DNA of 32,552 nt. It comes from Octopus sinensis (lineage: Eukaryota). The position numbers and the translations under genes are program-made. Where the stretch lies: the NCBI RefSeq assembly GCF_006345805.1, contig NW_021832761.1:1-32552 (forward strand). Direction: 5' to 3'. Shown piece by piece: positions 2,555 through 31,499 of this stretch. Below the pieces are notes generated by a model. It saw only the letters and a list, made by a program, of their open reading frames with translations, searched no databases and had not been told where the DNA came from. The stretch's first letter is position 1; every line of letters starts with the position of its first letter.

Positions 2555-2865
2555 TGTATGTGAAGGAATTTCGTAGACGGAAATTTGGTTGACAGAATGT
2601 TGTCGCACATATATATTTGTATGTGTGGATTTGTGTTTGTATTGTGGTTGTACTCCACAACCCGTTTGATAACTGGCATTGGTTTATTTACGTCTCCGTA
2701 AAATAACTAAAAAGTATACATCACAATTTATTGTAAACATTGTTGGCTGTAATATATCAGAATGCATAGAATATCTAAGGTCAATTTCTTCGTCTAAAAC
2801 CTCTCCAAGGAGGTGCCCCAGTATGGTAGCTATCCAATGGTTGAAAGAAGTAAAATAAAACAGAG
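2555..2865 (+). mobile_element. Old diverged SINE family A relative
   Basis: GGAATTTCGTAGACGGAAA, central TA/GT tract, and tail GGAGGTGCCCCAGTATGG...GAAAGAAGTAAAATAAAA. Confidence 0.6.
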
Positions 2866-3193: not shown

Positions 3194-3980
3194 TGGGTAT
3201 TCACCTGGGTATTCACATGAGTGATGACGCGACCTTTCATGTACATGTTGCTAAACTGGCAATGAAATGTAGACGGCTGGCTGGATGGATTCTTAGAACC
3301 TTTAGAACAAGAGAACAAGAAACCATGATGGTCCTCTGGAAGACACTTGTCCTAAGCCACTTTGACTATTGCTCTCAGCTATGGTCACCATCCAGTGTCA
3401 AGTTGATCACAGAACTTGAGGCGATCCAACGAAGCTACACGAAGAAGATAGCCTCTGTGTAGCATATGAGCTACTGGGAAAGACTCAAGAGATTAAAGCT
3501 CTATTCCCTGGAGCGTAGGCGAGAAAGATATGCCATAATATATATCTGGAAGATCCTGGAAGGACTTGTCCCAAACTTTGGCATCGAGAGTGACACAAAT
3601 GCCAGAACCGGGCGCCACTGCGTAGTACCAAGGACTCCAAATTTGCCATCAAGATGTAGGACAAGATATTGTGATAGCCTGGGCTTCAGAGGCCCACAGC
3701 TCTTCAATATCCTCCCGAAGAACCTGAGGGACCTGCATGGTGTAGATGCGGATGTCTTTAAAATAGGACTGGATCGCTTCCTGTCAGGTGTCCCAGATGA
3801 ACCAACTTCACGGCAGGAGGTGCAGATGAGGGCAGCTGCATCGAACTCTCTCATGCATCAGATGGCGTTTGCTAAAAAGCATCCGTGAGGTAAAATCGCG
3901 TAGCAAACCAAATGGCGGTGCCCCAGCATGGCCACAGCTCATTAGCTGAAACTGGAAAAATCAAATCAAAATCAAAATCA
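3194..3980 (+). mobile_element. 5'-truncated CR1/L2-group LINE: ORF2 C-terminus with one nonsense codon, 3' UTR, stem-loop and (AAATC)n-like tail
   Basis: ORFs 3193-3462 and 3466-3888 are in frame across TAG at 3460-3462 and read LGIHMS...WILRTF...LWKTLVLSHFDYCSQLWSP...ELEAIQRSYTKKI...YWERLKRLKLYSLERRRERY...GPQLFNILP, typical post-RT motifs. Tail 3913-3980 ends in ATCAAATCAAAATCAAAATCA. Confidence 0.92.
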
Positions 3981-4205
3981 TTGCGGCATTTTTTCTTCCG
4001 ATTCTTTAGATGCTGTCCTCAAGTTCCGCGGAGGTTGACTTGGGATTTCACCCATTCGGGGTGCATCAGATAAAGTATCTTTTAAATACTGGTGCCGATA
4101 TGATCGACAACATCCTTTACCTTAAATCTGCTGAGCTTGTGTCAGAATTTGAAACGGGCAGAATCGTTAACGCGCCGCGCAGGATTCTTAGCGGCATTTC
4201 GACGG
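3981..4205 (+). mobile_element. Degenerate SINE family B fragments
   Basis: AAGTTCCGCGGAGGTTGACTTGGGATTTCACCCATTCGGGG, then a second head GGCAGAATCGTTAACGCGCCG...TTAGCGGCATTTCG. Confidence 0.6.
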
Positions 4206-4750: not shown

Positions 4751-5340
4751 AATAACAATAATTATTATTATTTGGTACGTGAATTTATCTATGGCATTGT
4801 ACGGGGATATTGATTTCAGAACATATAATCAACAGACGCCATATAATGTATGTATCATCAGAAGTGGAATCGAAACCTAGTCGCATATTTGATAAAGAGG
4901 TTTATCAAAAGTCTACCAGTAATTTACAGCAGGTCACACTCCAGTGACTCTACTAATTTTGTTCTGTATAATTAATTTGTTGATCCTTTGGTCACGGATT
5001 GATCGGCTGTATTGAAACGGAAGGTTCCAGTGGTGTCACGATTCAATTGAAAATGGGATACTTGCGAGTTTAGGGAATTGTTTATGTGACAACCCCAAAC
5101 AATAGGAAGGGTGCAAACACTAACATATACCAATAAACACACGCACAAGCACACATGAACACACACACACAGAGTTATAACAACAGATCTATATACGTAC
5201 GTTCGTTCATAAAAAGAGCTGGCGTTAATGACAGGGAATTCTAAAACATATACATACATACATACATACATACATACATACATACATGCATACATACATA
5301 CATACATACATACATACATACATACATACGCATTCTTTCT

Positions 5341-5530
5341 TTTATTCATTTACTTCTTTCAGTCTTTTGATTGCAGCCATGCTGGAGCACTGCCTTCTAG
5401 GGTTTTAGTCGAACAGAGCAACCCCAGTACTTATACTATCGGTGGCTTTTGCCGAACCGCAAGTTTACAGGGACGTAAACACACCAAACCCGGTGGTCAA
5501 GCGATGGTAGGGGCGAAACTCACACACAGG
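5341..5530 (-). mobile_element. SINE family A, 3' half only
   Basis: TTTCAGTC...GCAGCCATGCTGGAGCAC...GCCGAACCGC...GGACGTAAACACACC. Confidence 0.85.
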
Positions 5531-5639
5531 ACAAACACACCAAACATACACACGCACGCACACCCATATTATATATATATATATATATCTATATATATAT
5601 TATAATATATATATATATAGATATTATATATATATATAA

Positions 5640-5682
<43 letters not shown>

Positions 5683-5684
<2 letters not shown>

Positions 5685-5785
5685 CGTTGAAAGCACCGGT
5701 TCTCGTGCGATCACCGAAGTTAAGCAACGTCGAGCCTAGTCAGTACTTAGATGGGTGACCGCTTGGGAAACCTAGGTGCAGTAAG
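5683..5785 (+). pseudogene. 5S rRNA-derived sequence, about 10-13 nt missing at the 5' end; head of a chimeric retroposon
   Basis: CACGTTGAAAGCACCGGTTCTCGTGCGATCACCGAAGTTAAGCAACGTCGAGCCTAGTCAGTACTTAGATGGGTGACCGCTTGGGAAACCTAGGTGCAGTAAG is recognisable metazoan 5S rRNA; A box, C box and the CCTAG/CTAGG helix pairing are retained. Confidence 0.95.
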
Positions 5786-5864
5786 AGTAACACATTGTTT
5801 TGAAAGGCATTGCCCCAGCATGGCCACAGCTCGTGAGCTGAAACTAGATGAAATGAAATGAAAA
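5683..5864 (+). mobile_element. Candidate 5S-derived SINE (SINE3) or 5S/LINE chimera
   Basis: 5S head, about 25-nt linker, then tail 5811-5845 matching LINE tail 3919-3953 at 33/35, then (GAAAT)n; embedded in (TA)n. Confidence 0.8.
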
Positions 5865-5974
5865 AATATATATATACACACGAACACGTCAAGGTCAGCA
5901 GCCCTCTTCCACACGCACATACAAACTCTCTTATACACACGCACACGCACTTTCGTTTTGGGAGCACCACTACT

Positions 5975-6294: not shown

Positions 6295-6545
6295 TCAGAA
6301 GATGCCAAGCAGTAGGATTGAACCTTGAACCATGTGACTGGGAATCAAAATTTTTACCTCACAGCCAAGCTTGTATGTATAAACACACACGCACACACAC
6401 ACATATGCACACAGACACATATATATATACTTTTATTCTTTTATTATTTCAGTCACTTGACTGCGGTCGTGTTGAAGCACTGCTTTTGGTCGGGCAAATC
6501 GACCCCAGCACTTATTCTTTGTAAGCTGATTATTATTCATAGTTT
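6295..6545 (-). mobile_element. SINE family A fragments (head about 6300-6372, tail about 6431-6540)
   Basis: GCAGTAGGATTGAACC...CCATGTG...CACAGCCA; TTTCAGTCACTTGACTGCGG...AAATCGACCCCAG. Confidence 0.7.
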
Positions 6546-6585: not shown

Positions 6586-6977
6586 AGCTAGCTTGCTTAC
6601 CAACCACATGGTTCCGGGTTCAGTCCCACTGCGTGGCACTTTACGAAAGTGTCTTCTATTGTAGCCTCAGGCCGACCAAAGCCTTGTGAGTGGATGTCTA
6701 GACGGAAACCGAAAAAAGCCCGTTTTATACATATGTGTGTGTGTGTGTGTGTGTGCGTGTGTGTGTGTTTGTGTGTCTGTGTTTGTCCCTCCACCATCGC
6801 TTGACAACTGATGTTGTGTTTACGTCCCCGTAACTTAGCGGTTCGGTAAAAGAGATCGATAGAATACGTACTAGGGTTATAAGGAATAAGTCGTGTGGTC
6901 GATTTGTTCAACTAAATGCAGTGCTCTAGCATGGCCGCAGTCAAACGACTGAAACAAATAAGAGAATAAAAGAACAT
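6586..6977 (+). mobile_element. SINE family A, near full length
   Basis: B box GGTTCAGTCCC, CORE-like segment, (GT)n, Nin-like segment and LINE-type tail. Confidence 0.9.
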
Positions 6978-7072
6978 AGGAAACCAGATTCCTATATTCT
7001 TTTATTCTCTTATTTGTTTCAGTCGTTTGACTGCGGCCATGCTAGAGCACTGCATTTATTTGAACAGATCGA
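6899..7072. repeat. Local inverted duplication: 84-bp arms, 6-nt loop
   Basis: 6899-6982 versus reverse complement of 6989-7072: 81/84 identical by manual alignment. Confidence 0.95.
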
Positions 7073-9561: not shown

Positions 9562-9965
9562 AGGAACATGAGGTCGTATAGTTAAGATGCTAACTGACCA
9601 AAACCTTGTTTACAACTGACAGCTGTAAGGAAATTTCTTTAGTTATAAGGATTGGGATAAGGGCAGATAAAGAATTCAAGTTAGTTGAAGAAAAGAGGAG
9701 GAAATTCAGGATAAGTAAAAGAACAGGTTGTCACAAGAACAAAAGGTCAATTTATCTATGTGGTGACAAGAAAATTAGGTCAGAGTAGAAAGATCATTAA
9801 ATTCGAAGGAACATACGAGGTTGTAGGTCAGATACAAACTGACCAAAACCCTACTTGCAACTGAGAGCCATCAAAATTTTTTAGCAGTAGGAATTTAGGT
9901 AAGGGGATGTGATAGAATAATGTAAAAGGGATTTAAGTTAGTTGCAGAAAAAAGGAAGAATTTTG
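9562..9965. repeat. Diverged direct duplication, period about 245 bp
   Basis: AACTGACCAAAACC at 9592 and 9837; GGAACAT..GAGGT.GTA, CAACTGA.AGC and AAGTTAGTTG.AGAAAA are collinear in both units. Confidence 0.75.
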
Positions 9966-9985
9966 TATATATATATATATACAAA

Positions 9986-10144
9986 AGGAGTGACTGTGTG
10001 GTAAGTAGCTTGCTAACCAACCACATGGTTGCGGGTTCAGTCCCACTGCGTGACATCTTGGGCAAGTGTCTTCTGCTAAAGCCCCGGGCCGACCAATGCC
10101 TTGTGAGTGGATTTGGTAGACGGAAACTGAAAAGAAGCCCGTCG

Positions 10145-10208
<64 letters not shown>

Positions 10209-10405
10209 TGTGTCTGTGTTTGTCCCCTTAGCATTGCTTGACAACCGATGCTGGTGTGTTTACGTTCGGCAAAAAGAGACCGATAGAATAAGTACTGGGC
10301 TTACAAAGAATAAGTCCCGGGGTCGATTTGCTCGACTAAAGGCGGTGCTCCAGCATGGCCGCAGTCAAATGACTGAAACAAGTAAAAGAGTAAAAGAGTA
10401 AAAGA
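9986..10405 (+). mobile_element. SINE family A, near full length
   Basis: All modules present; tail GGCGGTGCTCCAGCATGGCCGCAGTCAAATGACTGAAAC followed by (AAGAGTAA)n. Confidence 0.92.
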
Positions 10406-10963
10406 ATACATATATGTATGTATGTGTGTATATGTTTGTGTGTGCTTGTGTGTGTATAAATATAAGTATATACATACATGCATACATACGTACACGAACC
10501 CTATAAACATGTCCAGACATATAAATATCTGTCAGTGAATGATTGATTATATATTATACTGTGATCTCTTTTACTTTTCTACCCTTTCGAGGATCATGAT
10601 TGGATTATTTGTGGACCACGATTTGGCACATATACAAACTAGTTGTTGTTTGTTGTTGTTGTTTCTGTTGTTAATGATGATGACGATGATGACTGAAGAC
10701 ATTTTCAAATCATTACCGACCCATCATATTTTCTGTAAACTGCGTAACAAAGACAAGAATATGCATTTTGCTCAAGTATAAGACCCAAAGGTGTTATTTA
10801 AGGGGATATTGTAATGGGGATATATTTCTAGCAAGCTGATACTTCTGGCATGTGAAACTTCTTGGAAGCCCCGTATTGTCTATCTGAATCGCATTAGTTG
10901 TGTGGTGAGAAGTTTGTTTCCCAACTACATATATGTGTGTATGTATATATATGTATGTATAAA

Positions 10964-12463: not shown

Positions 12464-12695
12464 TGTGTGTGTGTGTGTGTGTTTGTGTGTCTGTGTTTGT
12501 CCCCCTAGCATTGCTTGACAACAGATGCTGGTGTGTTTACGTCCCCGTCACTTAGCGGTTCGGCAAAAGAGAGCGATAGAATAAGTACTGGGCTTACAAA
12601 GAATAAGTCCCGGGGTCGATTTGCTCGACTAAAGGCGGTGTTCCAGCATGGCCGCAGTCAAATGACTGAAACAAGTACAAGAGTAAAAGAGAGTA
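12464..12695 (+). mobile_element. SINE family A, 3' half, abutting the head of the family B copy
   Basis: Begins at (GT)n immediately after GCCAGCT; intact Nin-like segment and tail. Confidence 0.88.
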
Positions 12696-12896: not shown

Positions 12897-13287
12897 CTCT
12901 CTTTTATTTCTCTCTTTTACTACTCTTACTTGTTTCAGTCATTTGACTGCGGCCATGCTGGAGCACCGCCTTTAGTGGAGCAAATCGACCCCAGGACTTA
13001 TTCTTTGTAAGCCTAGTACTTATTCCATCGGTTTCTTTTGCTAAACCGCTAAGTTATGGGGATGTAAACACACGCGATGTTGAGGGGACAAACACACACA
13101 CACACACATATATATGCATATATATAATGGGCTTCTTTCAGCTTCCGTCTATCAAATCCACTCACAAGGCTTTGGTCGGCCCGAGGCTATAGTAGAAGAC
13201 ACTTGCCTAAGGTGCCACGCAGTGGGACTGAATCCGGAGCCATGTTGTTGGTAAGGAAGCTACTTACCACACAGCCACCCCTGCGCC
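12897..13287 (-). mobile_element. SINE family A, full length
   Basis: All modules present; head ends CAGCCACCCCTGCGCC. Confidence 0.92.
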
Positions 13288-18085: not shown

Positions 18086-18470
18086 GCTCAGGAGTAGATC
18101 TGTGGTAAGAAGTTTGCTTTACGACCACATGTTTCCGAGTTCAGTCCCACTGCGTGGCATTTTGGTCATGTGTCTTGTAGGTGGATTTGGGGACGGAAAC
18201 TGATAGAAGCTTCTAGTATATATGTGTATGTGTGTGTGTATGTGTTTACGAGTGTGTGTGAGTGTATGTGTGTCCCACCACCGTTTAAAACCGGTGTTGG
18301 TGCGCTTAAATCCCCGTAACAGCAGTTTGGAAAAAGAGACTGATAGCGTATGTACCAGTGTTTAAGAAACAAGTACTGGACTCGAAGCGTTGGAGTAAAA
18401 TTCATCAAGGTGGCGCCCCAGCATGGCCGCAGTCTACATGACTGAAACAAGTAAAAAAGGTAAAAAAAAC
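18086..18470 (+). mobile_element. SINE family A, older subfamily with internal deletion
   Basis: Head, B box GAGTTCAGTCCC, tail GGTGGCGCCCCAGCATGGCCGCAGTCTACATGACTGAAAC. Confidence 0.8.
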
Positions 18471-19151: not shown

Positions 19152-20009
19152 TTCTTTACTCTTACTCTTTACTCTTTTACTTGTTTCAGTCATTTGACTG
19201 CAGCCATGCTGGAGCACTGTCTTTTTAGTCGAGCGAATCGAAACCAGGACTTATTCTTTGTAAGCCTAGTACTTATTCTATCGGGTTTTGTTGCCGAACC
19301 GCTAAGTTACAGGGATGTAAACACACCAGCATCGGCTGTCAAGCGATGTGGCGGGGGTGGGGCAAACACAGACACACAATTATATACACACACATACATA
19401 TATATGTAGGTTCTTGGTCTCAAGCATTTGTCTTATGAAGAAAGGCTGAAGACGCTCGACCTTTATTCTCTAGAAAAACGACGACGCCGTGGTGATCTCA
19501 TTCTTGCTCACAACATCATAAGCGGAAAGTGTAACCTCTCGAAAGAGCTGTTCTTCACTCCTGCTCCAGAGCGTCGGCTGCGGGGTCACTCCGAAAAGCT
19601 CTATCTGCGACGATTTCATCTCAATCGAAGGAGAGGGGGCTTTCTCCGTCCGGGTTGCGGATCCGTGGAATAAGCTGCCGGACGAGATAGTGAAGATGCC
19701 GACGACCGCTCGGTTCAAAGTCTCTCTTGACCAGAAATGGCCTGAACTCTTTCCATGAACACCACCCTGTACATAAGTCCATGTCCCCCTACATGGCCTT
19801 GCTTTTTGCTTTTTGAGCCAAAAAATTAACTTAACTTAACTATATACATATATACGACGGGCTTCTTTCAGTTTCTGTCTACCAAATCCACTCACAAAGC
19901 TTTGGTTGGCTCGCGGCTATAGTAGGAGACACTTGCCCATGATGTGGGACTGAACCCGGAGCCATGTGGTTGGTAAGCAAGCTACTTACCACACAGCCAC
20001 TCCTGCGCC
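19152..20009 (-). mobile_element. SINE family A, full length, split by a LINE insertion in its central microsatellite
   Basis: 3' half 19152-19405 and 5' half 19841-20009. Confidence 0.92.
19406..19840 (+). mobile_element. 5'-truncated CR1-type LINE 3' end with one frameshift; (TTAAC)n tail
   Basis: LGLKHLSYEERLKTLDLYSLEKRRRRGDLI...LRGHSEKL; frameshift at the G-run 19635-19639; then FSVRVADPWNKLPDEIV...FKVSLD; stop 19756-19758; hairpin CCATGT-CCCCCT-ACATGG at 19779-19796. Confidence 0.92.
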
Positions 20010-22480: not shown

Positions 22481-23096
22481 TGTACTAAGAGCATAAAGTA
22501 TATATATACATTCATAGTATCATACATATATATATATACACACACATATACCTAGACATACGCACATGCATACATTTATACAACTACGTACATGCGCATA
22601 TATATGTGTGTATATATATATGTATGTATGTATGTATATGCGTGCTATATAGATATATTTTTCCATATCACATTTCGTCCATGTGTAATTTCTTTAAACT
22701 TGATACTAAAGAATATGAAGTATTTTCGTGCTATATTTCTGTTCCTCGTTACTGTATTACCTTATCAGTTTTAATGGAGGTCGCACGCACACTCATCAGT
22801 ACACCCTCCGTCCGTCCGTCCGACCAGCCACTCATACATACATATATACATACATACATACATGCCTACATACATACATACATACATGCATACACATACA
22901 TACATACTCTCATATGCACCTACCAAGTTATACACATACATAAATACATACATTCATAGACATTCATTCATTCATCCATCTACACATACATACCTACATA
23001 TTTATATGTATACACTATACATGCATGTATTTACACGCACGCACACACACACACACACATATACATACATGCTTACATATACATATGCATACATAC

Positions 23097-23240: not shown

Positions 23241-23418
23241 TCATACAATATGTACATGCATATATGTATACTTACATACAATCAGCTATCCAGCCAGTCA
23301 GCCAACCAACCAGCCGAAATGCAAGTACATCCATAAATACATACATACCTGCATACATACATTTCGTTCTTGGATTTGGTTTGCTGATTCTTTATATGAG
23401 TTCGTGTGTTGAAGCATA

Positions 23419-23802
23419 TTCTGTTGTGTCTGGGGAGCGTCATTTTCTTTTTGTGCCTTATAATTTAACACACTCACCGCTAAAATTTCCACTTATTTCT
23501 TATTTTTATTTTCCTAAAATTTTCGTTGCCTCTTGCAAAGTTTTCAATAGTCTTGACTCATGTCGATTGTATTGATTAGGTTCGTCTGTCCAATTTTCAA
23601 TTATTTCTTATTTTCATTGTCCTAAAATTTACGTTCCGTTTTACAACCGTTTCAATCGTCTCGACTAAGACTACTGAAAAGGTTGCAACACGCAAAGAAA
23701 AATTTTGGACAATAAAAATAAGAAATAAGTGGAAATTTTACGGGTGAGTCTGCTAAAGTATAAGGCACAAAAAGAAAACGACTCTCCCCAGACACAACAG
23801 AA
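23419..23802. mobile_element. TA-flanked foldback MITE with 136-bp arms and an extra internal subunit
   Basis: 23419-23554 versus reverse complement of 23667-23802: 120/136, ungapped; TA at 23417-23418 and 23803-23804; third copy of the inner subunit at about 23597-23666. Confidence 0.9.
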
Positions 23803-23841
23803 TATATATACGTACACATATCCATCTTATATGCACATATA

Positions 23842-24247
23842 GGCGCAGGAGTGGCTGTGTGGTAAGTAGCTTGTTTACCAACCACATGGTTCTGGGTTCA
23901 GTCCCACTGCGTGGCACCTTGGGCAGGTGTCTTGTACTATAGCCTCGGGCCGACCAAAGCCTTGTGAGTGGATTTGGTAGACGGAAACGGAAAGAAGCCC
24001 GTCGTATATATGTATATATATATATGCGTGTGTGTGTTTGTGTGTCTGTGTTTGTCCCCCTAGCATTGCTTGACAACCGATGCTGGTGTGTTTATGTCCC
24101 CGTTACTTAGCGTTTCGGCAAAAGAGACCCATATAATAAATACTGCGCTTACAAAAGAATAAGTCCCGGGGTCGAGTTGCTCGATTAAAGGCGGTGCTCC
24201 AGCATTGTCGCAGTCAAATGACTGAAACAAGTAAAAGAGTAAAAGAG
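23842..24247 (+). mobile_element. SINE family A, full-length reference copy
   Basis: GGCGCAGGAGTGGCTGTGTGG (A box), GGTTCAGTCCC (B box), CCTTGGGCAGGTGTCTT (CORE-like), (TA)n(TG)n, Nin-like segment, tail. Confidence 0.93.
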
Positions 24248-28188: not shown

Positions 28189-28350
28189 CGATATATATAT
28201 AGATTGATACATATATATATCCTATCACCTACACGACTAGCTGGCATATACAGGTGCTTACAGTTACCAAGTATTCACCCTGAATTTTATATATATATAT
28301 ATATTATATATATATATAGACACATCTATATATATGAATATATATATATA

Positions 28351-28393
<43 letters not shown>

Positions 28394-28409
28394 CGTGTTT
28401 ATGCATACT

Positions 28410-28629
28410 ACTTTTGTTTATTCAGTCATCGTATTGCGGCCATGCTGGTGCTGCACCATGAAGAGTTTTAGTCGAACAATCAACCCCAGTACTTAATTTG
28501 TAAGTCGGGCAATTATAGTTCTCCATTAAGGTACGGGGACGTAAACAACTAACAACCGATTGTGAAGCGGTGGGAGGGAACGCAAATGCAAAGACACGCA
28601 CACAGTCATACATACACTCACATACACCC

Positions 28630-28712
<83 letters not shown>

Positions 28713-28865
28713 TACACACGTTATATGACGGACTGCATTTAATTTCCGTCTACCAGATTCTCTCAAAAACTTTGGGTGGCCCGGAACAATAGTTGAAGGT
28801 ACTTGCCGAAGGTGCCATGCACTACCATAATGTTGTGTCGGAAGCTTCTAAAACACACAGCCGCG
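28410..28865 (-). mobile_element. SINE family A, diverged
   Basis: ATTCAGTCATCGTATTGCGGCCATGCTGG...GGGGACGTAAAC...TTTCCGTCTACCAGATTC...CACACAGCC. Confidence 0.75.
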
Positions 28866-29706: not shown

Positions 29707-29784
<78 letters not shown>

Positions 29785-29808
29785 CTCACACACAAATATA
29801 TAGACATG

Positions 29809-29842
<34 letters not shown>

Positions 29843-29875
29843 TAGATAGATAGACATGTATGCATAAACATACAC

Positions 29876-31114: not shown

Positions 31115-31120
31115 TATATA

Positions 31121-31454
31121 GGGGTAAAATATGCAAAATCAACGAAAATGTATATTGCAAATAGAAAAAGACTATTTATGACAGGTAGCGACAAATATAT
31201 ACATTTAGATTGACTGAGGTAGTAATACGAGTTATAAAGGTCATTTGAACAAACGATGAATAGCTTCGCGTAAAGCATTGGTTCGTTTTGTTCTCTTACT
31301 TTATTATCATCTTATAATCATGTCATAATAATGACCTTTATGACTCATATTACTACCTCAGTCAATCTAAATGTATATATTTGCCGTTACCTGTCATAAA
31401 TAGCCTTTTTCTATTTGCAATATGCATTTTCGTTGATTTTTCATATTTTACCCT
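31121..31454. mobile_element. Foldback MITE with 125-bp arms
   Basis: 31121-31245 versus reverse complement of 31330-31454: 117/125, no indels; TA on both flanks; 84-bp spacer. Confidence 0.92.
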
Positions 31455-31499
31455 TACATTTTCACGTGTATTTTACATTTTCTTTTCGTAACATATTTC

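What the first reader, a model, noticed from the sequence alone, without database searches (positions are those of the whole stretch)
5683..5864. 5S rRNA head fused to a LINE 3' tail: candidate SINE3 family in a probable cephalopod genome
Seen: about 100 nt of 5S rRNA with intact internal promoter boxes, a short linker, then TGCCCCAGCATGGCCACAGCTCGTGAGCTGAAACT (33/35 identical to the 3' end of the LINE at 3919-3953), then a pentamer tail (GAAAT)n comparable to the LINE's (AAATC)n. Established: 5S-derived SINEs (SINE3) exist but are rare, were first described in zebrafish, and use CR1-group LINE tails. Inference: this is either a 5S SINE family or a one-off 5S/LINE template-switch chimera. I do not recall one being described for octopus, but I cannot check this. 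A TTTT at 5798-5801 lies between head and tail and could terminate Pol III in this copy.
Basis: partly seen in the sequence, partly recalled or inferred. Interest (0 to 1): 0.82.

Follow-up and report, generated by a model that had tools for sequence, protein, structure and literature searches.

The report
Octopus 5S-headed SINE copy
This is one dead copy of a short octopus retrotransposon made of a 5S rRNA head and the 3' recognition tail of a CR1-like LINE; the structure is real, but 5S-type SINEs are a known kind already listed in published octopus repeat annotations, so it is ordinary.

Summary
Rfam finds a 5S rRNA segment at 5682-5777 (80 bits, E 1e-15, model positions 14-109 of 120). A TTTT lies at 5798-5801. 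The segment 5811-5845 matches the 3' end of the LINE fragment at 3919-3953 in 33 of 35 bases, with none expected by chance. A pentamer-repeat tail follows.

The tail is a two-hairpin 3' module (GGTGCYCCAGCATGGCC, then a covarying CAGNN...NNCTG hairpin, then AAAC and A-rich short repeats). Related LINEs and about a dozen tRNA-type SINE copies in the window share it. The window is from Octopus.

I read the element as a 5'-truncated, probably immobile copy of a simple SINE3: 5S head, about 13 nt of linker, about 46 nt of LINE tail. It sits in a (TA)n tract. I could not count copies, because no octopus genome was searchable.

A curated 2026 Octopus vulgaris annotation lists four "5S" SINE families covering 9.8 Mb, roughly one copy per 55 kb. 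An earlier study lists SINE/5S in O. bimaculoides and O. vulgaris. Family membership is therefore likely (about 0.7), and the novelty claim fails.

A one-off template-switch chimera remains possible (about 0.2), because the T4 sits one base before the LINE homology starts. Interest is low.

The parts
5566..5681 (.). (TA)n microsatellite directly 5' of the element; the probable target tract
   Evidence: TRF finds period 2 with 60 copies. The same ATATATATATA motif recurs directly 3' of the element.
5682..5789 (+). 5S rRNA-derived head. It lacks about 13 nt at the 5' end and lacks the canonical 3' T-run. By Xenopus numbering recalled from memory, box A is about 5718-5732, the intermediate element about 5735-5740 and box C about 5748-5765.
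   Evidence: Rfam RF00001 matches 5682-5777 at 80 bits, E 1.2e-15, model positions 14-109 of 120, with all aligned pairs canonical. The extension to about 5789 rests on ungapped similarity read from the sequence.
5790..5802 (+). Linker ACACATTGTTTTG of unknown origin; contains the T4 at 5798-5801
   Evidence: Sequence. It matches nothing else in the window. LINE homology starts at 5803.
5803..5844 (+). LINE-type 3' recognition module. Hairpin 1 pairs 5806-5813 with 5818-5825. Hairpin 2 is CAGCT (5827-5831), loop CGTG, AGCTG (5836-5840). A conserved AAAC follows at 5841-5844.
   Evidence: 33/35 identity to 3919-3953 and 84% over 62 nt. In the alignment of 15 tails, hairpin 2 is 92% paired with U-A to C-G and C-G to U-A exchanges. 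The single-sequence fold shows both hairpins.
5845..5866 (+). A-rich short-period repeat tail: TAGATGAAATGAAATGAAAAAA
   Evidence: Sequence. It is the counterpart of the (A)AAATC repeats after the LINE module and of the unit repeats on related LINEs and SINEs.
5866..5876 (.). ATATATATATA directly 3' of the element; candidate target-site duplication, uninformative because it is low-complexity
   Evidence: an 11-nt match to the upstream tract. No direct repeat brackets the tail alone or the 5S part alone.
3196..3891 (+). 5'-truncated LINE fragment: C-terminal part of ORF2, with an in-frame stop at 3463-3465 and the natural stop at 3889-3891
   Evidence: ORFs and translation. 599 homologues at E<=1e-5, best 65-71% identity. 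Longer relatives carry RVT_1 immediately upstream of the homologous region.
3911..3983 (+). LINE 3' module (hairpin 2: CAGCT-CATT-AGCTG at 3935-3948, AAAC at 3949-3952) followed by (A)AAATC repeats; closest relative of the element's tail

Best explanation
The segment 5682-5866 is one retrotransposed, 5'-truncated copy of a simple 5S rRNA-derived SINE (SINE3 type) of an Octopus genome.

Proposed mechanism. Master copies would be transcribed by RNA polymerase III from the internal 5S promoter (box A, intermediate element, box C). The transcript ends in a roughly 46-nt two-hairpin module plus A-rich short repeats. That is the 3' end of a CR1-like LINE group. The LINE's reverse transcriptase recognises this module and copies the RNA into nicked target DNA.

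This copy. It landed in a (TA)n tract and lost the first 13 nt or so of the 5S part. It is probably immobile, because a T4 terminator lies one base before the tail.

Shown: the 5S homology, the tail homology, the conservation and covariation of the tail hairpins, and the flanks.

Inferred: Pol III transcription, mobilisation by the LINE, and membership of a multi-copy family.
For: (1) The head is real 5S. The tail is real LINE 3' end.

(2) The tail is a functional-looking module, not a random LINE piece. Three LINE relatives of 65-71% protein identity (L001-L003) and about 10 tRNA-type SINE copies in the window carry the same module. It reads GGTGCNCCAGCATGGCC, then a hairpin, then CTGAAAC and short repeats. 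Hairpin 2 is kept by compensatory changes: CAGCT/AGCTG, CAGCC/GGCTG and CAGTC/GACTG. It is 92% paired, and 0 of 500 shuffles reach the observed covariation score. Sliding the 3' partners by 1-3 columns drops pairing to 3-44%.

(3) LINE homology in the 5S element starts within 1-2 nt of where it starts in the tRNA-type SINEs.

(4) The canonical T-run that ends 5S genes is absent at the end of the head. A SINE3 needs that loss so that transcription can continue.

(5) Only the whole unit is bracketed by matching flank sequence, (TA)n on both sides. Neither half is bracketed alone.

(6) The genome is Octopus. A curated O. vulgaris annotation reports four '5S' SINE families covering 9,831,953 bp of about 2.8 Gb, and 169 CR1 families, 13 of them recently active (PMC13282606). 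That density predicts about 114 bp of 5S SINE per 32.5-kb window; 183 bp are seen. SINE/5S is also listed for O. bimaculoides and O. vulgaris in PMC8967140.
Against: Only one copy was seen, and copy number could not be measured. No octopus DNA turned up in the three searchable contig collections. The six-frame peptide search found nothing. A 24.7-kb O. bimaculoides sample has no 5S element.

Identity with the catalogued '5S' families is assumed, not shown. Part of what those annotations call 5S could be rDNA: in PMC13282606 Table 1, 7 'recent' insertions cover 42 kb.

The T4 at 5798-5801 sits one base before the tail. That is what a template switch onto the U-tract end of a Pol III transcript would leave. 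It would also cut a Pol III transcript of this copy before the tail.

The repeat unit of the tail (TGAAA) differs from that of the nearby LINE copy (TCAAA).

The candidate target-site duplication is low-complexity. Hairpin 1 has one broken pair (T-T) in this copy.
Confidence: 0.7

Rival explanations
1. One-off or very low-copy chimeric retrocopy. A LINE reverse transcriptase began on a LINE (or SINE) RNA 3' end and copied about 60 nt. It then switched template to the 3' end of a 5S-type Pol III transcript. That transcript ended in UUUU, about 10 nt beyond the normal 5S end. The enzyme stopped near 5S position 14. No self-propagating family exists.
For: The T4 (5798-5801) lies one base 5' of the first LINE-homologous base (5803). 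That is the position expected if the Pol III terminator U-tract was the point of template switch. The element has no body domain, only head plus minimal tail. Only one copy was seen in 32.5 kb plus 24.7 kb of Octopus DNA. Template switching to small RNAs is the accepted origin of such chimeras and of new SINEs (cited in PMC4758252 and PMC4824008).
Against: The published density of 5S SINEs in O. vulgaris, about 0.35% of the genome in four families, makes a family copy a priori far more likely than a unique event. The canonical 5S terminator is missing and the 3' end of the head is more diverged than the promoter region. A fresh copy of mature 5S rRNA would not be expected to look like that. 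The breakpoint coincides with the module boundary used by the established SINEs.
Confidence: 0.2
2. Two independent adjacent insertions: a 5S pseudogene and, 13 nt downstream, an extremely 5'-truncated LINE or SINE tail in the same orientation.
For: CR1-type LINEs often leave very short 3' fragments, and the tail module is frequent in this window.
Against: No direct repeat brackets the tail alone or the 5S part alone, whereas the whole unit is bracketed by (TA)n. A 5S retropseudogene without a LINE tail has no obvious route of retrotransposition with tail-specific LINEs (inference). This subfamily of tail (CAGCT...AGCTG) occurs only twice in 32.5 kb, so chance adjacency within 13 nt in the same orientation is roughly 1e-3 or less (my estimate).
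Confidence: 0.05
3. A functional or orphon 5S rRNA gene.
For: High Rfam score with all aligned pairs canonical.
Against: The first 13 or so nt are missing, so helix I is lost. The 3' strand of helix I is diverged, there is no terminator at the 5S end, and the copy is not in a tandem array.
Confidence: 0.01

Closest known systems
SINE3 of zebrafish (Kapitonov and Jurka 2003) and other vertebrate SINE3 families
   Same: 5S rRNA-derived head with the internal Pol III promoter, and a 3' tail shared with a CR1-group LINE that ends in short tandem repeats (as described in PMC7245038).
   Different: The element here is minimal: head, about 13 nt of linker, about 46 nt of tail. It has no Deu or other body domain, belongs to a mollusc host, and must have arisen independently.
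'5S' SINE families in published Octopus repeat annotations (PMC13282606, four families and 9.8 Mb in O. vulgaris; PMC8967140, SINE/5S in O. bimaculoides and O. vulgaris)
   Same: Same genus, same class label, and a density that fits finding one copy in this window.
   Different: Those papers give only class-level tables. I could not see the consensus sequences, so identity with this element is not shown. The partner LINE and tail structure are not described there.
UnaSINE1 / UnaL2 of the eel (Kajikawa and Okada 2002, cited)
   Same: A SINE and a LINE share a conserved 3' stem-loop plus short repeats that the LINE reverse transcriptase recognises. This is the working model for the two-hairpin module seen here.
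   Different: UnaSINE1 has a tRNA head and the sequences are unrelated. Recognition has been shown experimentally in the eel system, not here.
Insect SINE3 families (HaSE3 and other lepidopteran families, SINE3-1_TC)
   Same: Invertebrate 5S-headed SINEs of independent origin. Conservation is concentrated on the promoter region (PMC10886601; PMC7245038).
   Different: Their partners are RTE- or I-clade LINEs, not a CR1-like LINE.
U6/L1-type chimeric retrogenes made by template switching (Buzdin et al., cited)
   Same: A small Pol III RNA, including its terminal U-tract, is fused in the same orientation to a 5'-truncated LINE 3' end.
   Different: Those are unique loci made by L1 and end in poly(A). 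Here the tail is a specific hairpin module, and a multi-copy family is likely.

Membership tests
SINE3 (5S rRNA-derived SINE; SINEBase criteria, PMC3531059) | At least 60% identity with 5S rRNA over at least 60 nt | tested here: met
   Rfam 5S_rRNA at 80 bits over 96 aligned nt, E 1.2e-15.
SINE3 (5S rRNA-derived SINE; SINEBase criteria, PMC3531059) | Short (<1 kb), interspersed, not tandem | tested here: met
   The element is about 185 nt. It is the single 5S match in 32.5 kb and is not in an array.
SINE3 (5S rRNA-derived SINE; SINEBase criteria, PMC3531059) | [quoted passage not shown] | not testable with these tools
   No octopus genome was searchable. The literature gives four '5S' SINE families covering 9.8 Mb in O. 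vulgaris, but identity with this element was not checked.
SINE3 (5S rRNA-derived SINE; SINEBase criteria, PMC3531059) | Extra sequence beyond the cellular RNA, with a 3' tail shared with a partner LINE | tested here: met
   33/35 and 84% over 62 nt to the LINE 3' end at 3911-3971. The module is conserved in related LINEs.
SINE3 (5S rRNA-derived SINE; SINEBase criteria, PMC3531059) | Internal Pol III promoter (box A, intermediate element, box C) retained | tested here: inconclusive
   The region is present and well conserved inside the Rfam alignment. Box positions were assigned from memory of Xenopus numbering, and function was not tested.
SINE3 (5S rRNA-derived SINE; SINEBase criteria, PMC3531059) | No Pol III terminator between head and tail, so the transcript reaches the tail | tested here: not met
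   TTTT at 5798-5801 in this copy. The canonical terminator at the 5S end is absent. Whether the family consensus has the T4 is unknown. This bears on the activity of this copy, not on its ancestry.
SINE3 (5S rRNA-derived SINE; SINEBase criteria, PMC3531059) | Target-site duplication around the whole element | tested here: inconclusive
   An 11-nt ATATATATATA lies on both sides, but it is microsatellite sequence.
Template-switch chimeric retrocopy (U6/L1 type) | A Pol III RNA with its 3' U-tract joined to a 5'-truncated LINE 3' end in the same orientation | tested here: met
   The T4 ends at 5801 and LINE homology starts at 5803.
Template-switch chimeric retrocopy (U6/L1 type) | Unique locus, with no other copies sharing the junction | not testable with these tools
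   The limitation is the same as for copy number.
CR1-group LINE (partner element at 3196-3983) | ORF2 with a reverse transcriptase followed by the conserved C-terminal region | tested here: inconclusive
   The window copy holds only the C-terminal region. Relatives P0011 and P0003 have RVT_1 directly upstream. The motif FDYCSQLWSP...LE.IQR...ERL..L.L.SLE.RR resembles the CR1/L2 C-terminus, a resemblance I recalled from memory. No clade phylogeny was done.
CR1-group LINE (partner element at 3196-3983) | Short 3' UTR with a conserved stem-loop and short tandem repeats at the end | tested here: met

The most novel reading that the evidence does not exclude
This may be the first structurally defined mollusc SINE3. 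It would be a minimal 5S-headed SINE of independent origin in octopods, with an identified CR1-like partner LINE. Its roughly 46-nt two-hairpin tail module would be the common currency of the octopus-specific SINE expansion. The T4 at the head-tail joint would be a preserved scar of the founding template switch onto a Pol III transcript.
Probability: 0.3. Interest if true: 0.35.

Novelty: already known. Interest (0 to 1): 0.15.

Why it matters
It matters little on its own. It adds one annotated example showing how octopus 5S-headed SINEs are built and which LINE tail they borrow.

The more useful by-product is the tail itself. A single two-hairpin 3' module, with compensatory changes in the second hairpin, is shared by a CR1-like LINE group, the dominant tRNA-type SINEs and this 5S element. 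SINEs make up a large part of octopus genomes. This module is a concrete candidate for the RNA signal behind that expansion, and it could be tested in a retrotransposition assay.

Tried and rejected
Junction and tail patterns in public collections:
- The junction-spanning pattern (5S box C region, a 30-60 nt gap, then the tail) found nothing in metagenome contigs or viral contigs.
- The general tail pattern found nothing in metagenome contigs, genome contigs or viral contigs.
- So these collections yielded no matching octopus DNA and say nothing about copy number.

Protein-database route:
- A six-frame peptide query across the junction against the 5.8-billion-protein database gave no hit at E<=10. 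The test is insensitive because the open frames are short.
- An exact look-up of the window's LINE ORF found nothing on record.

Sampling octopus DNA:
- Of six O. bimaculoides-type proteins, only one (P0121) had a contig on record. That gave 24.7 kb with no 5S element. With about 0.45 copies expected, this is uninformative.

Other attempts:
- The octopus 5S rRNA reference paper (PMC326244) and the octopus genome paper (PMC4795812) are not held. I therefore could not measure how far the head has diverged from the host 5S rRNA.
- ARAGORN finds no tRNA in the window, so the tRNA origin of the neighbouring SINEs rests on a B-box-like motif and on the literature.
- CpG observed/expected ratios are too noisy to date the element.
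- I tested whether the element sits inside the internal microsatellite of a split tRNA-type SINE, which would have given a clean empty site. The downstream flank does not continue that SINE, so I dropped the idea.
- The many miRNA-family matches at E<=1 are microsatellite artefacts, all far below gathering scores.

Full report
**What is in the sequence**

The Rfam 5S rRNA model matches 5682-5777 on the + strand. The score is 80 bits against a gathering score of 38, with E 1.2e-15. The match covers model positions 14-109 of 120, and no aligned base pair is flagged as non-canonical. It is the only 5S match in the 32.5-kb window, even at E<=1 and by sensitive BLASTN.

Read without gaps, weak 5S similarity continues to about 5789 (GGTGCAGTAAGAGT). 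The T-run that normally ends a 5S gene is not there. The first 13 or so nucleotides of 5S are missing, and the homology starts directly after a 116-bp (TA)n tract.

A 13-nt stretch follows (5790-5802, ACACATTGTTTTG) that matches nothing else. It holds the TTTT at 5798-5801.

From 5803 the sequence is homologous to the 3' end of the LINE fragment upstream. A local alignment gives 84% over 62 nt, 5803-5864 against 3911-3971.

The element ends in ATGAAATGAAATGAAAAAA. The LINE ends in (A)AAATC repeats. The units differ by one base.

**The LINE**

The stretch 3196-3891 is the C-terminal part of a non-LTR retrotransposon ORF2. It is 5'-truncated and has one in-frame stop at 3463-3465. It has 599 homologues at E<=1e-5, and the best reach only 65-71% identity. 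Longer relatives carry the RVT_1 domain directly upstream of the homologous region. Its conserved C-terminal motif looks like that of the CR1/L2 group. That resemblance comes from my memory, and I did no clade phylogeny.

**The tail is a shared, structured module**

Three related LINE 3' ends fetched from metagenome contigs (L001-L003) carry the same module. So do about a dozen SINE copies in the window. The module reads GGTGCNCCAGCATGGCC, then a short hairpin, then CTGAAAC, then an A-rich repeat with a short unit.

An alignment of 15 tails folds into two hairpins. The second hairpin is kept by compensatory changes:
- CAGCT/AGCTG in this LINE and in the 5S element
- CAGCC/GGCTG in L001-L003
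- CAGTC/GACTG in the abundant SINEs

In that hairpin 92% of cells are paired, and none of 500 shuffles reaches the observed covariation score. Sliding the 3' partners by 1-3 columns drops pairing to 3-44%. The 15 tails are related sequences, so this supports a conserved structure but does not prove it.

In the 5S element both hairpins are present, with one T-T mismatch in the first. LINE homology in the 5S element begins within 1-2 nt of where it begins in the other SINEs. This is the arrangement known from the eel UnaL2/UnaSINE1 pair, where the LINE reverse transcriptase recognises a 3' stem-loop plus repeats (cited).

**Whose genome**

Peptides translated from the abundant SINE of the window hit only Octopus bimaculoides proteins, at 76-93% identity. 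A 24.7-kb piece of the O. bimaculoides chromosome assembly carries the same SINE at 83-89% identity. The window is from Octopus; I cannot say which species.

**Limits of the insertion**

The whole unit is bracketed by (TA)n. An 11-nt ATATATATATA directly after the tail equals the tract directly before the head. No direct repeat brackets the tail alone or the 5S part alone. This fits one insertion into a (TA)n tract, but the evidence is weak because the flanks are low-complexity sequence. I also tried to show that the element splits a neighbouring SINE, which would have given a clean empty site. That attempt failed.

**Family or one-off?**

I could not count copies. The metagenome, viral and prokaryote-genome collections hold no sequence with the octopus tail module. 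A six-frame peptide search across the junction found nothing. Only one octopus locus could be fetched, and it has no 5S element.

The literature fills part of the gap:
- A curated 2026 annotation of O. vulgaris lists four "5S" SINE families covering 9,831,953 bp. One family has recent insertions. It also lists 169 CR1 families, 13 of them recently active (PMC13282606).
- That is about 0.35% of the genome, or about 114 bp expected per window of this size. The window holds 183 bp.
- An earlier study lists SINE/5S for both O. bimaculoides and O. vulgaris, and 5S-Deu-L2 for the giant squid (PMC8967140).
- The giant squid genome paper reports about 24,000 5S-derived loci (PMC6962438).

Reviews describe SINE3 as the second most widespread SINE type. 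It has arisen several times and is also present in insects (PMC7245038; PMC10886601). I found no paper that describes the structure or the partner LINE of an octopus 5S SINE.

**Weighing the readings**

A random 5S-plus-LINE-tail element in an Octopus genome is much more likely to be a copy of one of the catalogued families than a unique chimera.

Against that stands the T4, which ends one base before the LINE homology starts. A template switch onto the U-tract end of a Pol III transcript would leave exactly this pattern. The T4 would also stop a Pol III transcript of this copy before the tail.

The T4 may be a mutation in a dead copy, a leaky site in the family consensus, or the scar of the founding event. 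These cannot be told apart from one copy.

My estimates are:
- 0.7 for a copy of a multi-copy SINE3 family
- 0.2 for a one-off or very low-copy chimera
- 0.05 for two independent adjacent insertions
- about 0.01 for a functional 5S gene, because helix I is missing

**Verdict**

The element is an ordinary member of a known class that has already been listed for this genus. Novelty is low. The most useful by-product is the shared two-hairpin tail module, a testable candidate for the recognition signal behind the large octopus SINE expansion.

Noticed in passing
window 9965-10400 (+); other copies near 5336-5560 (-), 6430-6540 (-), 6726-6974 (+), 12464-12690 (+), 12908-13073 (-), 18220-18470 (+), 19160-19405 (-), 23852-24231 (+), 28282-28726 (-): The dominant repeat is a SINE of about 430 nt with three parts. 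The first is a tRNA-like head with a B-box-like GGTTCAGTCCC, which ARAGORN does not call as tRNA. The second is an internal (TA)n(TG)n microsatellite. The third is a body ending in the same LINE-type tail module plus (AAGTAAAAG)n. The internal microsatellite is present in every full copy, so it seems to be part of the element.
   Followed up: partly
window 12531-12677 / 12927-13073; 6914-6974 / 6997-7057; 31116-31245 / 31330-31459; 23416-23554 / 23667-23805: Closely spaced inverted SINE pairs, 88-93% complementary with 20-250 nt between the arms. If transcribed, they could form long double-stranded RNA hairpins, which may be relevant to the heavy A-to-I RNA editing known in octopus. This was not examined.
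   Followed up: no
window 2795-2860 (+): A diverged variant of the tail module (GGTGCCCCAGTATGGTAGCTATCCAATGGTTGAAAG plus AAGTAAAATAAAAC) ends another short repeat just upstream of the LINE fragment. This suggests further SINE or LINE subfamilies using the same kind of tail.
   Followed up: no
L001 (ERZ23499302), L003 (ERZ23499275), L002 (ERZ16768396): Short contigs in public ENA 'metagenome' assemblies carry LINEs of this group with the octopus-type tail. L003 also carries an octopus-type flanking repeat (TTTCTTTACTACCCACAAGGGGC, compare window about 12250). They look like cephalopod host DNA inside metagenome assemblies.
   Followed up: partly
P0121-P0125 (O. bimaculoides proteins); L005 14467-14655: Several annotated O. 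bimaculoides proteins contain stretches translated from the abundant SINE. Examples are FAM98A, a UBC-domain protein and a liprin-alpha-like protein. These are SINE exonisation or gene-model artefacts.
   Followed up: no
window-wide, e.g. 22558-22637, 10424-10494, 29749-29844: Dozens of sub-threshold Rfam matches to miRNA families (mir-297, mir-3149, mir-466, mir-1277) all fall on (TA)n, (TG)n or (TATG)n microsatellites. They are artefacts of low-complexity hairpins.
   Followed up: yes
window 5730-5739 and 5769-5776: Both arms of the 5S helix IV/V stem read CCTAG/CTAGG where the Rfam consensus has CCGGG/CCAGG-type sequence, so the changes compensate each other. Either the host's own 5S rRNA has this variant, or the SINE head has been kept under structural constraint. 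No octopus 5S reference was available to decide.
   Followed up: partly
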